A stretch of 64,000 nucleotides of DNA from Octopus bimaculoides (GCF_001194135.2 NC_068987.1:63058233-63122232), one strand, 5' to 3'. Numbered from the stretch's first letter, positions 1,319-49,219 are shown. Numbers and translations: made by a program. Notes: a model not told the origin generated them from the letters alone.

Positions 1319-2583
1319 TCAGGTCATCCCATAAGTTCTGTCCGAATTTTGAATAAAGAAAACAAGTGATCAAATGTTATATTTAATTGAAATTTAATCA
1401 TCAACGTACTTTCCCTGATTGTCTATGACTTCCTTCCATCTATTTACAAACTTTTTAATCCCATCAATGTAAAACTCTTTTGGTTTCAAAGCAAAGAACT
1501 CTGAAATGTCAGTTATGACCTCCTCCTGGCTTGCGAAAGTTATGTCCCCCAAGTACAAAACAACAAAACAAATGGTAGTCTGAAGGAGCAAGGTCGGGAG
1601 AATAAGGTGGATGAGAAATTTTTTCCCAATTAAGCGCTTCGATCTTTGTAGTGTGGGGTCACGCATTGTCATGATGAAACATCACTTCTTTTCGATTCAC
1701 TAAAGGTGGTCTTTTTTTTCTTCAAAGCTTGGTTCAAACACTCTAATAGCTGACAGTAGACTTGAGCATTGATTGTGGCATTAGGAGGTAACAATTCAAA
1801 GTGAATTACTCCTTTGCAATCCCACCAGATAGAAAGAACCTTTTCCCCATGAAGTTCCCTTCTTGGTTGTGGTAGAATTTTTCCCCTTTTACCAAGCCAC
1901 TGTTTATGACATTTAACATTTTGATAGAAGATCCATTTTTCTTTATCAGTCACAAGTCTATCTAAAAATGGTGAACTGAATTCGCGAGAATAGAGAGAAG
2001 AGCAGATGTCAACTCAGGATTTGCGATTGCTTTCGGACACTTCATGAGGCACCCATTTTCCAAGTTTAGGAATCTTTCCAAGTTGTTGAAGATTACGATG
2101 ACCAGTTGTATGGTTTGAACTAAACTTTATTGCCAATTCTTCAACTGATAATGCAGGATTTTCTTCAAGTAATGCCTCAGGGAGTCTATCATCAAACTCA
2201 ATTGGACATCCTGTTCAATCTTCATCTTCAAGGCTGAAATCTCCACTTCTGAATTTTGCAAACCATCTTCTGCAAATACTTTCATTCAAGCATTCTTTGC
2301 CATAAACTGAGTTTATGTTTTGAGTCGCTTCGGCTGCAGAGTTTCCTTTTTGTACTCATAAAGCATTATGTGCCTCAAATGCTCTTTGAATACTTCCATG
2401 TTAGAAAGGGTGTTAATGAAAGAAATTTTAATTCTATTATTCTGTAAAATAATATTTAATTAGTTTAAATGTACACAAATGCATAAAAATAATTCTTAAT
2501 TCCATTAGACTTTCTAAAATACTATTAAATTTCATTCAATTTAAAAAAAGGCAAAATCGGACAAAACTTATGGGATGACTTGA
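1319..2583 (-). mobile_element. Full-length mariner (DD34D) DNA transposon, inactive
   Basis: About 30-bp TIRs (tcaggtcatcccataagttctgtccga / tcggacaaaacttatgggatgacttga), TA duplications at 1317-1318 and 2584-2585, length 1265 bp. Confidence 0.93.
1394..2399 (-). pseudogene. Mariner transposase pseudogene
   Basis: MEVFKEHLRHIMLYEYKK..., RRWFAKFRSGDFSLED, KWVPHEV, LVTDKEKW, WWDCKGVIHFELL, HHDNA*PH, SPDLAPSDY, GKYVDD*. Carries frameshifts and three in-frame TGA codons. Confidence 0.93.
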
Positions 2584-19950: not shown

Positions 19951-20594
19951 TCTACTCTATTGTAACTATTCAGGATAAATCTATGGAATGGAGACAACTT
20001 CCTCCTACTAGCCTCTTAGACTCTGCGAAAGAGTAAAGGTTGTTGCTTGTTAATCACTGATCAAGTCAGTTATAAAGAATGATATTCTTTACTGATAATA
20101 CTCCTCCATCCATTACAACTATTGATACCAGAGGCTTTGGTCAGCTAAAGGCAATAGTAGTGGACACTTGTCCAAGGTGCCATGCAGTGGGACTGAACAT
20201 GAAACCATGTAGTTGGAAAGCAAAAGTTTCAACAACACAACCATACCATTCACCCCCACACACACATACTAATTATTACTGGTGGCGCACCAGCATGGCC
20301 GCAGCCTCAAGGCTGAAAGATATAAAAGAATACTCATACATCCACACCTCTCTCTCTCTCTTTCTCTCTCACACACACACATCCACCTCTCTCTCTCACA
20401 CACACACACATGCACGCACGCACACACTTTGAAGGTATTTTTCACTTCTTTTTTAAGACAGTTATTATTTCTTCCTGGTATATAAAATGTTTGCTTCATT
20501 CCTTTATCAATTTCTGCTCAATTTATATATACCAAACTTTTGTGATGTCATCACCTCTTATATATTGTGTGGCTAAACATATTACTAATGTATT

Positions 20595-37561: not shown

Positions 37562-39074
37562 ATGTATGTGTGTATATATGTATGTGTGTGTGTATATGTA
37601 TGTATATTATATATATATANNNNNNNNNNNNNNNNNNNNNNNNNNNNNNNNNNNNNNNNNNNNNNNNNNNNNNNNNNNNNNNNNNNNNNNNNNNNNNNNN
37701 NNNNNNNNNNNNNNNNNNNNNNNNNNNNNNNNNNNNNNNNNNNNNNNNNNNNNNNNNNNNNNNNNNNNNNNNNNNNNNNNNNNNNNNNNNNNNNNNNNNN
37801 NNNNNNNNNNNNNNNNNNNNNNNNNNNNNNNNNNNNNNNNNNNNNNNNNNNNNNNNNNNNNNNNNNNNNNNNNNNNNNNNNNNNNNNNNNNNNNNNNNNN
37901 NNNNNNNNNNNNNNNNNNNNNNNNNNNNNNNNNNNNNNNNNNNNNNNNNNNNNNNNNNNNNNNNNNNNNNNNNNNNNNNNNNNNNNNNNNNNNNNNNNNN
38001 NNNNNNNNNNNNNNNNNNNNNNNNNNNNNNNNNNNNNNNNNNNCTTTGATGAGAGAGATAAATTCTTGGCAATCTTATGTATACTTTTCCAGTGAAATTC
38101 TTCACTGATATCGAAAAGGTGAAAACAAGGAATGTTAATTCTCTAAATGAAGTATTAACAGTAACTGCACGATAAAGTGAAGTATATTGCCACTTAAGTG
38201 TGGCTGACCCCTAGGGGTGGATGTTACTGTTGCTTTTAGCCCCAGGAGGACATCTCCTCCAGCTGGCAAACAGGACATAGTAGTGTGTCGATAAGCCAGC
38301 TGGAGGAGATGTCCTCCTGGGGCTAAAAGCAACAGCCAGAGGAGACAGGGTCCATTATGAGCTTGCGAAACTTGAAGTAGCACGGAATCTGAATCGAACT
38401 GTTTTGAATAATACATGTAACACCTAATAAATGTGTTGAGTGCCCACTCACTCATATATATGTGCGTATGTGTGTGTGTGTGTGTATCATCATCATCGTT
38501 TAACGTCCGCTTTCCATGCTAGCATGGGTTGGATGATTTGACTGAGGACTGGTGAAACCAGATGGCTACACCAGGCTTCAATCTGATTTGGCAGAGTTTC
38601 TACAGCTGGATGCCCTTCCTAACGCCAACCACTCAGATAGTGTAGTGGGTGCTTTTACGTGCCACCGTCATGAAGGCCAGTCAGGAGGTACTGGCAATGG
38701 CCGTATATATNNNNNNNNNNNNNNNNNNNNNNNNNNNNNNNNNNNNNNNNNNNNNNNNNNNNNNNNNNNNNNNNNNNNNNNNNNNNNNNNNNNNNNNNNN
38801 NNNNNNNNNNNNNNNNNNNNNNNNNNNNNNNNNNNNNNNNNNNNNNNNNNNNNNNNNNNNNNNNNNNNNNNNNNNNNNNNNNNNNNNNNNNNNNNNNNNN
38901 NNNNNNNNNNNNNNNNNNNNNNNNNNNNNNNNNNNNNNNNNNNNNNNNNNNNNNNNNNNNNNNNNNNNNNNNNNNNNNNNNNNNNNNNNNNNNNNNNNNN
39001 NNNNNNNNNNNNNNNNNNNNNNNNNNNNNNNNNNNNNNNNNNNNNNNNNNNNNNNNNNNNNNNNNNNNNNNTTT

Positions 39075-39109
<35 letters not shown>

Positions 39110-39958
39110 CTGTTACATATATATACAAATATGTATATTTGTATGTATATATATATATATATATATATTGGTGTATATATGTCAAAATCACTTTAATGAC
39201 CACTTTTCCATGCTTGTATAGGTTGGATGGAGTTTTGTTGAGATGAATTTGTAGCATGGTTATGATGAAAGACTTCTCCGTATATATACATCCTTTATGT
39301 ATAAATTGAGACACAAAGTGTTCATTTCAATACATGGAGAATAAACTGTGTATGAAATGACATATTACAAGTGCAGCAAATCTTCATCAGAAATTCACAT
39401 TTAGGCTGATTTTACACATCTATGCATATTCTTGTTGCCAGTTGCTATGATATGTTTCTTCAGCTATTGCATTGGGTTGAGTATGTAGCTGTGGAAACAG
39501 CTATTAGTGAAATTTGTGCTGGGTTGAGCATGTAGCAAAAGAATTCATCAACGAACAAATTCATCAAGGAACAAGTTTGCTCATGGTCTGAATTCACTTT
39601 GGCTTTTTCATACCAAAACCATTTGTAGCCTCTGTTCACAGAAAGTTCTTGTGATTGTCACCAAATTATCACATGAACAAAGAGCGCTGATTGGCTGAAA
39701 TGGGGGCTGCACTCATGATGAACTTGTGGTTTACATGTAGCTGAAAGTGGGGTTGAAACCAACTTTTAAGATTTTTACTACAACTGGATGCCCTTCCTCT
39801 CACCAACCCTCATCTGTTTCCTAGTAGGTTAATATTTCCCCATGACTAGATATGTTTTCATGGAAGATTGGTAATGAAAGACACCACCTGCATGATGGTA
39901 ACATTTATTTCCAACTGTCACACGATGTTAAGGCAAGGAGACAGTAACACACACACAC

Positions 39959-42799: not shown

Positions 42800-42954
42800 G
42801 ACATGTTACCTATGGAAAAGAAACTGTTTGAAGAGATGGCTCAGAAGGACAAGATTCGGTACGAAAATGAAATGGCTAACTATGTGCCACCCCCCGGTGA
42901 AATTAAACGGAAACGGAAACAAGTTAAAGATCCGAATGCTCCAAAACGTTGTCT
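42800..42954 (+). CDS. HMGB: HMGB/Dsp1-like protein, internal coding exon (end of HMG box A, linker, start of box B)
   Basis: Acceptor tcccttcAG at 42798-42799, donor GTgagt at 42955. 155 nt encode [51 protein letters not shown] plus a split Leu codon. The FEEMA..DK.RY..EM..Y.PP and KDPNAPKR motifs are diagnostic of HMGB/Dsp1. The symbol is family level only. Confidence 0.93.
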
Positions 42955-45380: not shown

Positions 45381-46211
45381 TATATATATATATATATATA
45401 TAGTTTTAGGGAAATTAATAATTTTCATCGATGAGTTCTTGAAAACTGGTTATTTTCCCTAAAACTATATATTATATATACTTTATCTATAAGGCTCAAT
45501 TTAATTTTAATTTTTTATAAATTGATTTTAATTGAGTTTTTTACCTGTAATTTTGGATTTTGTCCCTAATATTATNNNNNNNNNNNNNNNNNNNNNNNNN
45601 NNNNNNNNNNNNNNNNNNNNNNNNNNNNNNNNNNNNNNNNNNNNNNNNNNNNNNNNNNNNNNNNNNNNNNNNNNNNNNNNNNNNNNNNNNNNNNNNNNNN
45701 NNNNNNNNNNNNNNNNNNNNNNNNATATATATGTGTATATATCATCATCATTATAATTTAATGTCTATTTTCCATGCTGGCATGGATTGGACGGTTTGTA
45801 ATCCTGGCCCTCAGCTCATCCTTTGTATTGTAGCTGGATTTGTTGGTCTCTCATTCCACCACACCCCACATAAAGAAGTTGAGAGGGTTGCAGTCAGGTG
45901 GGTTAGGATGCCAAGCATCAGGTTCCACTGAAGAAGTGCATATGTATTTATATATATACACACACATGAAAGGCTTCCACACAGTTTTTGTATATCAAAC
46001 TCACTCACTTGGCATTGGTCGGCCTGGGGCTATAGTAAAAAATAATTTACCCATGGTGCTGTGCAGTGGAACTGAACCCCAAACTATGTGGTTTCAAAGC
46101 GAACTTCTCAACCATATAGCCATGTCTGTGCCTTATTTACCTCTGCTCCTTATATTACAGTCACATTAATTTACTTTACATCTTCTCTTTCATTTCTATT
46201 TTCATTTTCAG

Positions 46212-46386
46212 CTCGGCGTTTTTCATCTTCTGTAAGGACCACAGAGCAAAGCTGATTGAAGAAAAACCAGAATTAAAAGTATCTGAAGTGGCTACACTGC
46301 TGGGAAAGATGTGGAAATTATCGACACCTGAGGTGAAGAAATCATATGAAGAAAGAGCAGCACAAGATAGAAAACGATATGAGAAG
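46212..46386 (+). CDS. HMGB: HMGB/Dsp1-like protein, HMG box B exon
   Basis: Acceptor cattttcAG at 46210-46211, donor GTaatt at 46387. 175 nt whose phase is compatible with the previous exon. Encodes (L)SAFFIFCKDHRAKLIEEKPELKVSEVATLLGKMWKLSTPEVKKSYEERAAQDRKRYEK. Confidence 0.93.
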
Positions 46387-46661
46387 GTAATTGTTTTGTT
46401 TGTTCAAGAGTTTTATATCAAAGCAAGTATGGCTGTGTGGTTAAGAAGTTTGCTTCGCAACCACATGTTTTGTGTTCAATCCCACTGTCTTCTACTGTAG
46501 CTCTAAGCTGACCAAAGCCTTGTGAGGGCATTTGTCAGATGGAAACTGAAAGAATCCCATTGTGTAAATTGTGTGTGTGTGTCTATGTGTGCGAGTGCAT
46601 GTGTGTGTATGTATGCGTGTATGTGAGTGTGTATATTTGTGTCTTTTTATCTTGATATTGT

Positions 46662-47042
46662 GGAAGCGCAATGGCCCAGTGGTTAGGGCAGCGAACTCGT
46701 AGTCATAGGATTGCGGTTTTGATTCCCAGACCGGGCGTTGTGAGTGTGTATTGAGCGAAAACACCTAAAGCTCCACGAGGCTTCGGCAGGGGATGGTGGC
46801 GAACCCCGCTGTACTCTTTCACCACAACTTTCTCTCACTCTTACTTCCTGTTTCTGTTGTGCCTGTAATTCAAAGGGTCAGCCTTGTCACACTGTGTCAC
46901 ACTGAATATCCCCTAGAACTACGTTAAGGGTACACGTGTCTGTGGAGTGCTCAGCCACTTGCACGTTAAGTTCACGAGCAGGCTGTTCCGTTGATTGGAT
47001 CAGCTGGAACCCTTGACGTCGTAAGCAACGGAGTGCCAACAA
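46662..47042 (+). mobile_element. tRNA-derived SINE family E inserted into a family A copy; another copy at about 33236-33551 (-)
   Basis: A box TGGCCCAGTGG, B box GGTTTTGATTCCC, (CAA)n tail; 12-bp TSD atcttgatattg / atcttgacattg at 46649-46660 and 47043-47054. Confidence 0.88.
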
Positions 47043-47459
47043 ATCTTGACATTGCATGACTGTTGTAAATTATCGTCCTTCATTTCCAGTGTTCTGTGAA
47101 AGCATGTCTGGCCCAGGTGTAATATTGCCTTGCTTGCAAACAGGTAAGGACTAGTGAAAGGAAGGACATCCAGCCATGGAAAAAGAAACTTCTTTTAAAA
47201 ATACTGCACACCATCTCACTCTTGATTACATGAACCTTTAAATGGCAGTAAAGAGTTTGCATGATTGTGTGTGCCAAGCAATCAGAAAAACAAAAATTAT
47301 CTCTTTTCCTGAAGGGTAATTTTTATAATTATTTTCACTTTAAATAAATACAAAAACTATAGTAATTGTCAGTTTCTCTTCCAATAAAATTTACAATCTC
47401 CTTGTTGAAGAGTGCCATAGATTATTCACTTTTGTCTAATGACGGCTAAATCTCTTTTA

Positions 47460-47972
47460 CTCTTTTACTTGTTTCAGTCATTTGACTGTGGCCATGCTGG
47501 AGCACCGCCTTTATAGTCGAGCAAATCGACCCCAGAGCTTATTCTTTGTAAGCCTAGTACTTATTCTATCGGTCTTTTTTGCCGAACTGCTAAGTTATGG
47601 GGACGTAAACACACCAGCATCGGTTGTCAAGCGATGCTGGGGGTCAGCCTTGTCACACTGTGTCACGCTGAATATCCCCGAGAACTACGTTNNNNNNNNN
47701 NTCTTTGTAAGCCTAGTACTTATTCTATCGGTCTTTTTTGCAGAACTGCTAAGTTATGGGGACGTAAACACACCAGCATCGGTTGTCAAGCGATGCTGGG
47801 GGTCAGCCTTGTCACACTGTGTCACGCTGAATATCCCCGAGAACTACGTTAAGGGTACACGTGTCTGTGGAGTGCTCAGCCACTTGCACGTTAATTTCAC
47901 GAGCAGGCTGTTCTGTTGATCGAATCAACTGGAACCCTCAACGTCCTAAGCGACGGAGTGCCAACAACAACT
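47460..47972. mobile_element. Chimeric SINE: reversed family A 3' part joined to the family E 3' half
   Basis: Junction at gtcaagcgatgctgggg|gtcagccttgtcacac; 47527-47691 is duplicated across a 10-N gap. Confidence 0.7.
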
Positions 47973-48106: not shown

Positions 48107-48931
48107 GAAATGATAATCTTCCGAAGTCAGCAAGTCAGTGTTGAATCACCAAAGGCTATTCCTGTACCAAAGACCACAAATGAAGAATTCCAACCAAAAG
48201 CAAAAGTTGCCAAATTGAAACCAGAGAAATCAGTTAAACCTCAAGCACCAGTAGCTGTACAAGTAAAATCTCCACCGTCACAACCACAACTACCGCCAGC
48301 AAAACCCATGATTAAAAATACCAAAATAACTGATAACCGGACCAAAGCAGCAAAGGCACAGATGGCTGCTCAAGCGGCTCAAGCGGCACAAGCGGCACAA
48401 GCAGCACAAGCAGCTCAAGCAGCCCTAGTTGCAGCAACAGTGAAAAGAGTGGTAGTAGAGTCAGACGATGAGTCAGACGAGGATGATGATGAGGAAGAAG
48501 GTGCAGAGTCGGAAGAGGGGGAAGAGGGCAGCAGTGAAGCTGGGGAAGAGAGCAGTGGGGAGGAAGAGGAGGAGGAAGAAGGGGAAGAGTCAGAGGGAAT
48601 GGCGGAGGCGGTGGAAGTTAAGGGCAAGGCACAGTGCAAGGACAGTGGTACCATCAATACTGACAACAACAACGACGATGTCGACGATGACGATGATGGT
48701 GATGAGGATGAGGATGAGGATGATGATGAGGAGGAGGAGGAAGTGGAGGAGGAAAATGACAACAATAATGACGAGGATAATGATGACGAGGGGGATGATG
48801 GTGGTAATAATGCAGGTGTCGAAGTTGACGATAAAGATGACAGCAGTGATGATGATGATGACGATGAGGACGAGGACGATGAGGACGAGGACGATGAGGA
48901 CGATGACGATGAGGAGGAGGAAGATGAATAA
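48107..48931 (+). CDS. HMGB: HMGB/Dsp1-like protein, terminal coding exon (end of box B, Lys/Pro-rich linker, AAQ repeat, long acidic tail)
   Basis: Acceptor ttgcAG at 48105-48106, phase 0. Continues YEK|EMIIF, as expected for the end of an HMG box. Open for 274 codons to TAA at 48929-48931. Confidence 0.88.
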   Translation, partial: EMIIFRSQQVSVESPKAIPVPKTTNEEFQPKAKVAKLKPEKSVKPQAPVAVQVKSPPSQPQLPPAKPMIKNTKITDNRTKAAKAQMAAQAAQAAQAAQAAQAAQAALVAATVKRVVVESDDESDEDDDEEEGAESEEGEEGSSEAGEESSGEEEEEEEGEESEGMAEAVEVKGKAQCKDSGTINTDNNNDDVDDDDDGDEDEDEDDDEEEEEVEEENDNNNDEDNDDEGDDGGNNAGVEVDDKDDSSDDDDDDEDEDDEDEDDEDDDDEEEEDE

Positions 48932-49219
48932 AGCAATGCAATTTGAGAGGCAAAAAGTGCTTTTTTTTTTTTTAATATTTTTTTAATCGCTTAGTGAGAA
49001 GGGGCAAAAGGCAGCCCCTGTGGTCCATTTGGGCCTCTGACTGGTGGCAGGAAAGGTGGACATTATGCTCAAAACCAGAGATCTGTCTCAAATGCTTGTA
49101 ACAGAATGGACTCTGCTAAAACCATCTGATGGCCTGTTGAGGTTGTTAAACAAGTCTATGTATTAAGTCTACCAAAATCGTCCTACTCTATCGAGATCAT
49201 GTACACATTGCATTTATTT

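What the first reader, a model, noticed from the sequence alone, without database searches (positions are those of the whole stretch)
48107..48931. HMGB-like protein with a 274-aa C-terminal extension and a roughly 157-aa bipartite acidic tail
After box B come about 85 aa rich in Lys/Pro/Ala with SP motifs (linker-histone-like), an AAQ repeat, an E-rich block, a short basic spacer (VKGKAQCK) and a D/N/E-rich block to the stop. Many S-x-x-D/E CK2-type sites are present. The vertebrate HMGB1 acidic tail is about 30 aa, and Drosophila Dsp1 has no comparable tail, so this one is about five times longer. Box B is also diverged. Inference: a lineage-specific HMGB variant combining DNA bending with a nucleolin/nucleoplasmin/UBF-like acidic domain, possibly a histone or protamine chaperone or a condensate-forming chromatin protein.
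Basis: partly seen in the sequence, partly recalled or inferred. Interest (0 to 1): 0.72.

Follow-up and report, generated by a model that had tools for sequence, protein, structure and literature searches.

The report
Octopus HMGB with an oversized acidic tail
This is the last exon of an octopus HMGB chromatin-protein gene whose flexible linker and acidic tail have grown to 5-10 times the usual size by repeat expansion; the feature is real, conserved between two Octopus species and undescribed in the literature searched, but it is an enlarged version of a standard design and not a new kind of protein.

Summary
Window 48107-48931 (+) is a 274-codon terminal exon, joined in frame to HMG-box exons at 42800-42954 and 46212-46386 through GT/AG sites. 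The first coding exon lies in the N gap 38711-39071.

The exon encodes the end of box B, a 77-aa K/P/A-rich linker, an AAQ/Ala-rich block predicted to be helical, and two acidic blocks. The acidic region is 157 aa with net charge -95.

The Octopus sinensis orthologue (RefSeq 'glutamic acid-rich protein' X1/X2) has the same exons and splice sites. Its annotated C-terminus is shifted by one base, yet the acidic frame is the conserved one (dN/dS about 0.1-0.2, same stop).

Seventeen canonical mollusc, annelid and unplaced marine HMGBs have only 34-55 aa after box B. The nearest relative, from the cuttlefish Sepia, has 71 aa; octopus has 269. An exhaustive search of 1.84 billion proteins found no relative of the extension outside Octopus.

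It is best read as a lineage-specific expansion of the normal HMGB linker and acidic tail by in-frame repeat slippage. Chaperone or condensate roles remain inference. Expression in octopus, and whether it is a paralogue or the sole HMGB, are unresolved. It is a new variant of a known kind, of moderate interest.

The parts
38711..39071 (.). Assembly gap (361 N) where the first coding exon should lie (50 aa, the N-terminal half of box A; MGKKADGKPRSRSTSYMFFVKICREEHEKQHPGVKLDFKEFLRKCSERWK in O. sinensis)
   Evidence: O. sinensis exon L008 10001-10150 lies between blocks that map to window 38330-38428 and 39073-39158. tblastn with the O. sinensis and Sepia proteins finds no such exon in the sequenced part of the window.
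42800..42954 (+). Coding exon: C-terminal half of box A, the inter-box basic linker and the start of box B (DMLPMEKK...DPNAPKRC)
   Evidence: tblastn against human HMGB1 gives E 4e-12. The exon has AG/GT boundaries and is in frame. It differs from O. sinensis by one residue.
46212..46386 (+). Coding exon: core of box B (LSAFFIFCKDHRAKLIEEKPELKVSEVATLLGKMWKLSTPEVKKSYEERAAQDRKRYEK)
   Evidence: Pfam HMG_box scores 85.8 bits, E 2.7e-24. AlphaFold pLDDT is 86-93. Splice sites are conserved in O. sinensis, and dN/dS over this exon and the 42800-42954 exon together is 0.03.
48107..48130 (+). End of box B helix III (EMIIFRSQ), at the start of the terminal exon
   Evidence: It matches HMGB1 DIAAYRAK after the same junction. 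It is contiguous as ...RYEQEMAIFRGQ in the intronless Sepia-type gene. The predicted helix runs across the junction.
48131..48361 (+). K/P/A-rich basic linker, 77 aa, net +10, predicted disordered
   Evidence: Composition. pLDDT is below 50. dN/dS against O. sinensis is 0.14 over aa 1-85, this linker plus the 8-residue box B end. There are no relatives outside Octopus.
48362..48445 (+). AAQ/Ala-rich block ((GCN GCN CAA)n, six AAQ units), predicted to form one long helix
   Evidence: TRF reports period 9/18 at 48371-48423. Six amino acids present here (two AAQ units, 18 nt) are absent from O. sinensis. The helix covers residues 187-229 of the partial protein with pLDDT 60-72.
48446..48601 (+). 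Acidic block 1, E/S/G-rich, net -29
   Evidence: Composition. TRF reports arrays of period 9 and 12. It is conserved in O. sinensis with dN/dS 0.34.
48602..48646 (+). Short neutral spacer AEAVEVKGKAQCKDS between the two acidic blocks
   Evidence: Composition. One non-synonymous change against O. sinensis.
48647..48931 (+). Acidic block 2, D/E/N-rich, net -65, plus the TAA stop (48929-48931)
   Evidence: TRF reports arrays of period 3-18. 18 of 24 substitutions against O. sinensis are at codon position 3. dN/dS is 0.20 overall and 0.11 downstream of the O. sinensis frameshift. The stop is shared.

Best explanation
**What it is**
- This is the terminal coding exon of an Octopus two-box HMGB gene with the layout box A, box B, basic linker, acidic tail.
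- In the Octopus lineage the normally short C-terminal disordered region (a linker of about 20-30 aa plus a D/E tail of about 16-30 aa) has expanded to a 105-aa linker/Ala-Gln segment plus a 157-aa acidic tail in two blocks. The expansion came from in-frame slippage of triplet-type repeats.

**Shown here**
- The gene structure, the conservation, the purifying selection on the acidic frame and the restriction of the extension to Octopus.

**Inferred from what is established for HMGB1, HMG-D and ZmHMGB1**
- The boxes bind and bend DNA without sequence specificity.
- The acidic tail folds back on the basic boxes and linker and damps DNA binding.
- The tail is released or competed by basic partners such as the histone H3 and H1 tails, and tuned by CK2-type phosphorylation.
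- The tail charge (-95) far exceeds the positive charge of the rest of the protein (+27). The protein should therefore be strongly auto-inhibited and carry surplus acidic surface available for basic chromatin proteins.
For: **Gene model**
- GT/AG, in-frame exons.
- Pfam finds two HMG_box stretches and nothing else.

**Orthologue**
- O. sinensis has the same four coding exons and conserved splice sites.
- The RefSeq models use the same 46386>48107-type junction.
- The intronless Sepia-type ORF reads straight through the equivalent point.

**Constraint**
- dN/dS is 0.03 for the box exons and 0.14-0.34 for the tail segments.
- 40 of 58 substitutions are at codon position 3.
- Indels are multiples of 3 except for one net -1.
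- The stop is identical in both species.

**Origin by repeats**
- TRF arrays of period 3, 6, 9, 12, 15 and 18 cover the AAQ and acidic blocks.
- AAQ copy number and D/E run lengths differ between the two species.

**Size comparison**
- 17 canonical HMGBs (13 named molluscs and annelids, 4 unplaced from RNA-seq or marine metatranscriptomes) have 34-55 aa after box B; Sepia has 71; octopus has 269.
- The canonical ones already carry a K/P/A linker followed by a D/E tail.

**Restriction to Octopus**
- The exhaustive phmmer search finds only the O. sinensis orthologue.

**Disorder and charge**
- Structure prediction; charges.

**Mechanism by analogy**
- Acidic tails occlude the DNA-binding face, and phosphorylation strengthens this (PMC4207994).
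- The HMGB1 paper PMC3902940 characterises an interaction of HMGB1 with histone H3.
Against: - No expression evidence for octopus could be obtained. No RNA-derived ORF covering the linker exists in the protein collections, apart from the RefSeq models.
- The O. sinensis assembly carries a 1-nt frameshift in acidic block 2. If this is real, the last ~60 aa would be dispensable in that species.
- Third-position bias and triplet indels are partly what repeat-unit slippage would give without selection.
- The N-terminal half of box A is unverified in this species because of the assembly gap.
- The functional steps are by analogy only.
Confidence: 0.8

Rival explanations
1. It is a specialised paralogue, for example germline- or tissue-restricted, that acts mainly as an acidic chaperone or condensate scaffold for histones or sperm nuclear basic proteins. 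A separate canonical HMGB elsewhere in the genome would do the housekeeping job. This is essentially the first reader's functional reading.
For: - The octopus and Sepia proteins form a 100%-bootstrap clade on a long branch outside the canonical mollusc and annelid HMGBs.
- That clade lacks the 2-aa box B deletion shared by all canonical lophotrochozoan HMGBs examined.
- The protein has a net charge of -68 and a pI of 4.3.
- No octopus RNA-derived ORF was found in the Logan-based collections, which fits low or restricted expression.
- HMG-box proteins take part in the histone-to-protamine transition in other animals (PMC13578768 abstract).
Against: - No canonical cephalopod HMGB was found in three searches.
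- The Sepia relative is seen on 56-85 contigs across many whole-larva RNA-seq runs. No canonical-type hit exceeds 12 contigs. This suggests it may be the main HMGB there.
- There is no homology to nucleoplasmin, nucleolin or UBF.
- No expression or binding data exist.
Confidence: 0.3
2. The long tail is neutral, unstable low-complexity sequence: a run-away coding microsatellite with no length-dependent function. It is tolerated because any acidic tail above a threshold length suffices.
For: - The tail is a mosaic of short triplet-type tandem arrays.
- Repeat copy numbers differ between two close species.
- The O. sinensis assembly even carries a frameshift that removes the last ~60 acidic residues from the annotated protein.
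- Sepia manages with 62 aa.
Against: - dN/dS is 0.1-0.34 across all tail segments, including the non-repetitive linker and spacer. The motif GMAEAV.VKGKAQCKDS is conserved.
- The block order and the stop position are the same in both species.
- Downstream of the O. sinensis frameshift, changes remain synonymous or D/E swaps in the acidic frame. This points to an assembly error or a very recent event.
Confidence: 0.25
3. It is an annotation or assembly artefact or a decaying pseudogene: the acidic ORF is a chance open frame in GA-rich repeats and is not part of the HMGB protein.
For: - (GAN)n is open in several frames on both strands.
- The first coding exon is missing from the window.
- There is a frameshift in the O. 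sinensis assembly.
Against: - Two independent assemblies of two species give the same exon.
- The exon begins with the last turn of box B, exactly as in HMGB1 and Sepia.
- The missing exon maps into an N gap.
- All splice sites are intact, and the box exons show 7 synonymous changes to 1 non-synonymous.
- HMGBs characteristically end in acidic tails.
Confidence: 0.04

Closest known systems
Canonical metazoan HMGB proteins (vertebrate HMGB1-3; mollusc and annelid HMGB annotated as 'HMGB1/2-like', 'HMG-T-like' or 'DSP1')
   Same: - Two tandem HMG boxes, a basic linker and a C-terminal D/E tail.
- The same exon boundaries as I recall for human HMGB1: after ...ERWK, within ...PKRxx|SAFF and after ...YEK (from memory, not checked against a record here).
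- Conserved Cys23, Cys45 and Cys106 equivalents, Phe38 and Phe103 equivalents, and a conservative I122V change (alignment).
   Different: - 269 aa follow box B, against 34-55 aa.
- The acidic region is 155-157 aa in two blocks with Asn, Ser and Gly interspersed, against 16-30 aa of nearly pure D/E.
- There is an extra AAQ/Ala-rich block predicted to be helical.
- The boxes are only about 50-58% identical to the canonical ones.
- It lacks the 2-aa box B deletion of lophotrochozoan canonical HMGBs.
Sepia esculenta HMGB-like protein (P0002/P0044, RNA-seq-derived) and its relative P0003 (intronless ORF on a 192-kb genomic contig, ENA analysis ERZ21867824)
   Same: - It is the closest relative: 63% identity over the boxes and a 100%-bootstrap clade.
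- Shared motifs are EEHE[KR]QHPGVKLDFKEF, LKVSEVAT and EM.IFR.Q.
- The tail is acidic and contains Asn runs.
   Different: - Only 71-72 aa follow box B. There is no K/P/A linker and no AAQ block.
- The gene is intronless and head-to-head with a Tim22-like gene. The octopus gene keeps the ancestral introns and has no Tim17-family neighbour in the window.
Octopus sinensis 'glutamic acid-rich protein' isoforms X1/X2 (XP_029639268.1, XP_036360879.1)
   Same: It is the orthologue: syntenic, with the same exons and splice sites, 97% identity over the boxes and linker, and the same tail blocks.
   Different: - The annotated C-terminus is out of frame by 1 nt from mid acidic block 2 onward (RRKRRKMTTIM...).
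- Six amino acids of the AAQ block (two AAQ units) are absent.
- The name does not reflect the fact that it is an HMGB.
Acidic-tract chromatin proteins (UBF acidic tail, nucleolin N-terminus, nucleoplasmin A2 tract)
   Same: They share long D/E/S-rich disordered tracts next to nucleic-acid-binding or chaperone modules. UBF also combines HMG boxes with an acidic tail. This comparison rests on general knowledge.
   Different: - There is no sequence or domain relationship. Pfam finds no Nucleoplasmin, RRM or UBF-type box array, and the exhaustive search finds no relatives.
- The resemblance is compositional only.

Membership tests
HMGB (two-box, non-sequence-specific HMG-box chromatin proteins) | Two tandem HMG boxes (A and B) | tested here: met
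   Pfam HMG_box gives 2 stretches, 85.8 bits. Box B and the second half of box A are encoded in the window. The first half of box A is seen only in the O. sinensis orthologue, because in the window it falls in an N gap.
HMGB (two-box, non-sequence-specific HMG-box chromatin proteins) | Basic linker followed by a C-terminal acidic (D/E) tail | tested here: met
   The linker has net charge +10. It is followed by 157 aa with net charge -95 running to the stop. The order matches canonical HMGBs, but the region is 5-10 times longer.
HMGB (two-box, non-sequence-specific HMG-box chromatin proteins) | Conserved structural and intercalating residues (Phe38, Phe103 and Ile122 equivalents; Trp; Cys23, Cys45, Cys106) | tested here: met
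   The alignment shows F, F and V (I122V), W and all three Cys conserved. The box A residues come from O. sinensis exon 1.
HMGB (two-box, non-sequence-specific HMG-box chromatin proteins) | Groups with HMGB proteins in similarity searches and trees | tested here: met
   Apart from a few three-box protist proteins, the significant hits are two-box HMGBs. In the NJ tree the protein falls among metazoan HMGBs, though on a long branch with Sepia.
HMGB (two-box, non-sequence-specific HMG-box chromatin proteins) | DNA bending and binding to distorted DNA; tail-mediated auto-inhibition | not testable with these tools
   This needs biochemistry with recombinant protein, with and without the tail.
Canonical lophotrochozoan HMGB orthologue group | 2-residue deletion in the box B loop (W-E-x-C-P--N-K-P-K-Y type) and about 65-77% identity among members | tested here: not met
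   The cephalopod clade keeps the full-length loop and is only 49-58% identical to the canonical members. It sits outside the group in the tree. I therefore do not file it as a plain member of that orthologue group. Whether it is a paralogue or a divergent orthologue is unresolved.
Linker histone H1 C-terminal domain-like | About 40% Lys, multiple S/TPxK motifs and sequence relatedness to the H1 C-terminal domain | tested here: not met
   Lys is 18%. There are two S/T-P motifs and no SPKK. There are no relatives outside Octopus.
Nucleoplasmin / nucleolin / UBF | Nucleoplasmin core, RRM plus GAR, or a multi-HMG-box UBF array | tested here: not met
   Pfam finds only HMG_box and HMG_box_2. The exhaustive phmmer search of the extension finds only the Octopus orthologue.

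The most novel reading that the evidence does not exclude
This may be the principal, possibly the only, two-box HMGB of octopuses. Its 157-aa, -95-charge tail together with the Ala/Gln helix would then give it a qualitatively new activity: a self-contained chaperone for histones or sperm basic proteins, or a charge-driven condensate former, fused to a DNA bender. General chromatin architecture in Octopus would then rely on an HMGB unlike that of any other animal studied.
Probability: 0.12. Interest if true: 0.6.

Novelty: new variant of a known kind. Interest (0 to 1): 0.38.

Why it matters
- HMGB acidic tails are a well-studied regulatory device, and their length (about 20-30 residues) is tightly conserved across animals.
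- A natural HMGB with a tail 5-10 times longer, kept under purifying selection, is a ready-made test of how tail length and charge set auto-inhibition, histone-tail binding and phase behaviour.
- It also shows coding microsatellites remodelling a core chromatin protein in cephalopods.
- On the practical side, the O. sinensis RefSeq entries are misnamed 'glutamic acid-rich protein' and probably carry a frameshifted C-terminus.
- It remains a compositional elaboration of a known architecture, so the surprise to a specialist is moderate.

Tried and rejected
- **Box A first exon.** I looked for it in the window with human, Sepia and O. sinensis queries and did not find it. Synteny explains this: it falls in N gap 38711-39071.
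- **Look-up of isoform X2.** The locus look-up failed. X1 worked.
- **Synteny with Sepia.** I tested for the Tim22-like neighbour. None is present in the window or in L008.
- **Paralogue or orthologue.** I traced the run accessions of canonical-type hits. The P0012/P0021 clade comes from unrelated runs, including marine metatranscriptomes, so this was not informative. No cephalopod-labelled canonical HMGB appeared in the best 120 of two searches. Absence from a truncated list is not proof.
- **Literature.** Searches for octopus or cephalopod HMGB and for 'glutamic acid-rich protein' in octopus found nothing relevant.
- **Intron repeats.** A tRNA scan of the window was negative.
- **Rejected readings.**
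  - Chance ORF or pseudogene: see the rival explanations.
  - A linker-histone-like domain: the composition and motifs do not fit.
  - Homology to nucleolin, nucleoplasmin or UBF: no domain or sequence match.

Full report
**1. Observation**

It is preceded by a good acceptor, ttaattgcag|GAA.

Upstream on the same strand there are two HMG-box exons:
- 42800-42954 encodes DMLPMEKK...DPNAPKRC.
- 46212-46386 encodes LSAFFIFCKDHRAK...RKRYEK.

Both have AG/GT boundaries. The three pieces join in frame to a 384-aa partial protein. Pfam finds two HMG_box stretches (85.8 bits, E 2.7e-24) and nothing else, even at E <= 1.

The segment composition is as reported:
- a K/P/A-rich linker (aa 9-85, net +10);
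- an AAQ/Ala block (aa 86-113);
- an E/S/G-rich acidic block (aa 114-165, net -29);
- the spacer AEAVEVKGKAQCKDS;
- a D/E/N-rich block running to the stop (aa 181-274, net -65).

Together the acidic region is 157 aa with net charge -95.

Two details were overstated. There are only two S/T-P motifs. The S/T-x-x-D/E matches number eight, overlapping in about four clusters.

**2. Organism and orthologue**

The best database match is Octopus sinensis 'glutamic acid-rich protein' isoform X2 (P0001, 97% identity). Its cluster mate, isoform X1 (P0043, XP_029639268.1, 393 aa), adds a normal box A N-terminus.

The O. sinensis locus (L008, CM016865.1) is collinear with the window at about 85-95% nucleotide identity, so the window is from another Octopus species.

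O. sinensis has four coding exons, and all splice sites match those in the window. Its first coding exon (L008 10001-10150) lies between blocks that map to window 38330-38428 and 39073-39158. In the window this is the 361-N gap at 38711-39071. That explains why no box A first exon was found by tblastn.

**3. Is the splice and the frame right?**

Four lines of evidence support the 46386>48107 join:
- It is phase 0 with GT/AG sites.
- The terminal exon starts with EMIIFRSQ. This completes box B helix III exactly where HMGB1 has DIAAYRAK.
- The RefSeq models use the same join.
- The closest relatives, from cuttlefish, are intronless and read ...RYEQEMAIFRGQ... without interruption.

AlphaFold (single sequence) predicts box B at pLDDT 86-93, with helix III continuing across the junction.

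Openness of the acidic part is not evidence in itself, because (GAN)n is open in several frames. The comparison with O. sinensis is informative, though:
- 58 substitutions, 40 of them at codon position 3 of the window's frame.
- In acidic block 2 the figure is 18 of 24.
- All indels are multiples of three, except one net -1 at exon position about 627-637.

That single-base difference is why the O. sinensis models end in RRKRRKMTTIMTTRIMMMRGVMVVIMQVP. Adding one G to the GAG run restores ...EEEENDNNNDNEDNDDEGGDGGNNAG...DDEEEEDE and the same stop as in the window.

dN/dS by region:

| Region | dN/dS |
|---|---|
| Box exons (8 differences in 330 nt, 1 non-synonymous) | 0.03 |
| Box B end + linker (aa 1-85) | 0.14 |
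| Acidic block 1 | 0.34 |
| Acidic block 2 | 0.20 |
| Acidic block 2, downstream of the frameshift, in the acidic frame | 0.11 |

Intron and UTR divergence is 3-8%.

The acidic frame is therefore the conserved one in both species. The O. sinensis frameshift is most simply an assembly error or a very recent change. One caveat applies: in triplet repeats, slippage alone also favours in-register changes.

**4. How unusual is the tail?**

A search with a canonical-type HMGB returned 1198 hits at E <= 1e-20. The best 120 are 189-255 aa long. They include named proteins from Pinctada, Elysia, Patella, Mytilus, Physella, Mactra, Mya, Lottia, Pomacea, Babylonia, Nucella, Capitella and Helobdella.

Measured on 17 of them (13 named molluscs and annelids plus four unplaced Logan-derived sequences), the region after box B is 34-55 aa: a linker of 18-30 aa and an acidic region of 16-30 aa. 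Human HMGB1 has 53, 23 and 30 aa. The octopus protein has 269, 114 and 155 aa.

These canonical proteins already carry a K/P/A-rich linker (for example KKAKPEKPAPKVVAPVV or GGASPAKKPAGPPAKKPKPE) followed by D/E. The octopus architecture is the standard one, enlarged.

**5. Origin and distribution of the extension**

TRF shows the AAQ block and both acidic blocks to be mosaics of short arrays with periods of 3, 6, 9, 12, 15 and 18. Repeat numbers differ between the two Octopus species: six amino acids of the AAQ block (two AAQ units) are present in the window and absent from O. sinensis, and the D/E runs differ in length. This is the signature of replication slippage within coding sequence.

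An exhaustive phmmer search of terminal-exon aa 1-185 against 1.84 billion representative proteins returned a single hit, the O. sinensis orthologue. The extension has no detectable relatives elsewhere, including linker histones, nucleolin, nucleoplasmin and UBF.

The nearest relatives are P0002/P0044 and P0003, at 63% identity over the boxes. They share the motifs EEHE[KR]QHPGVKLDFKEF, LKVSEVAT and EM.IFR.Q.
- P0002/P0044 come from Sepia esculenta RNA-seq. Runs SRR19578108 and SRR23936182 are identified through PMC10141105, PMC10442824 and PMC10571815.
- P0003 is an uninterrupted ORF on a 192-kb genomic contig.

They have 71-72 aa after box B, with no K/P/A linker and no AAQ block.

A search with the full Sepia protein found no further clade members. 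Scores drop from 424 to 216 bits straight into canonical HMGBs. The large expansion is therefore specific to the octopus lineage as far as these data reach.

**6. Paralogue or divergent orthologue?**

This is unresolved.

For paralogy:
- In an NJ tree of the box region, the octopus and Sepia proteins form a 100%-bootstrap clade on a long branch outside the canonical mollusc and annelid group.
- All canonical lophotrochozoan HMGBs share a 2-residue deletion in a box B loop. The cephalopod clade, human HMGB1 and DSP1-like proteins lack it.

Against paralogy:
- No cephalopod canonical HMGB surfaced in three searches.
- The Sepia protein is seen on 56-85 contigs across many runs, while no canonical-type hit exceeds 12 contigs. 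A second abundant HMGB in Sepia should have shown a comparable count.

The hit lists are truncated to 120, so this is suggestive only.

**7. Mechanism**

Shown here:
- two HMG boxes with the key residues conserved, namely the Phe38 and Phe103 equivalents, a conservative I122V change, Trp, and Cys23, Cys45 and Cys106;
- a disordered basic linker;
- a 43-residue Ala/Gln-rich helix of moderate confidence;
- two disordered acidic blocks;
- charge of +27 over the first 277 residues against -95 in the tail, giving net -68 and pI 4.3.

Inferred from established HMGB biology:
- The boxes bend DNA.
- The tail binds back onto the boxes and linker and lowers DNA affinity, and CK2-type phosphorylation strengthens this (PMC4207994).
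- HMGB1 interacts with histone H3, which helps position it on chromatin (PMC3902940).

With about 68 surplus negative charges, this protein should be more strongly auto-inhibited than HMGB1, and should keep acidic surface free for basic partners. Whether that amounts to histone or sperm-protein chaperoning, or to condensate formation, was not tested here.

**8. Surroundings**

No other convincing gene lies in the window. It is rich in N gaps, microsatellites and SINE-like repeats. A mariner-type transposase remnant (Pfam Transposase_1, E 5e-22) lies at 1672-2013 on the minus strand. No Tim17-family gene is present, unlike next to the Sepia gene.

**9. Verdict**

The 'lineage-specific HMGB variant with an exceptionally long, bipartite acidic tail' is supported. 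The 'linker-histone-like' and 'nucleolin/nucleoplasmin/UBF-like' labels are compositional analogies without homology. The proposed functions are untested.

The sequence exists in RefSeq for O. sinensis under an uninformative automatic name. No paper found here describes it.

I rate it a new variant of a known kind, with interest of about 0.38.

Noticed in passing
L008 about 20225-20240 (O. sinensis CM016865.1), equivalent to window about 48733-48743: The O. sinensis RefSeq proteins XP_029639268.1 and XP_036360879.1 end in an out-of-frame RRKRRKMTTIM...MQVP. One base is missing from a GAG run relative to the window. Restoring it recovers the acidic tail and the shared stop. This is probably an assembly indel, and the name 'glutamic acid-rich protein' hides the fact that the gene is an HMGB.
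   Followed up: yes
L001 10001-10711 and 4969-5163 (-); L011 383-985 (-) and 1262-1966 (+): The Sepia-type relative is intronless in genomic DNA. In RNA-derived contigs its 5' end abuts a spliced Tim22/Tim17-family gene on the opposite strand, which suggests a bidirectional promoter. This may be a retrogene or a case of complete intron loss. The octopus gene keeps the ancestral introns.
   Followed up: partly
Alignment (box B loop, window about 46330-46345): All canonical mollusc and annelid HMGBs examined share a 2-residue deletion in a box B loop (CP--NKPKY). Human HMGB1, DSP1-like proteins and the cephalopod clade lack it. This could serve as a marker for HMGB paralogy in Lophotrochozoa.
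   Followed up: partly
window 38711-39071 (also 37620-38043 and 45576-45724): Assembly gaps interrupt the gene. The 361-N gap hides the first coding exon (the first half of box A), so any gene model built on this assembly would be N-terminally truncated.
   Followed up: yes
window 1672-2013 (-), possibly extending to 1397: A mariner-type transposase remnant (Pfam Transposase_1, partial DDE domain, E 5e-22). The reading frame is broken.
   Followed up: partly
window 46640-47040 and 47450-47900 (intron), with many other copies across the window and L008: SINE-like interspersed repeats fill the last intron. One copy is duplicated on either side of a 10-N gap (47692-47701). ARAGORN finds no intact tRNA.
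   Followed up: partly
window 48415-48936 (-): A 173-codon Ser-rich antisense ORF and a second open sense frame (48468-48986). Both are by-products of the GAN repeats and are not genes.
   Followed up: no
P0001 versus P0043 (O. sinensis isoforms): Isoform X2 starts at the Met inside the 42800-type exon, so it would lack the first half of box A. This implies an alternative 5' exon or promoter. Its reality could not be checked here.
   Followed up: no
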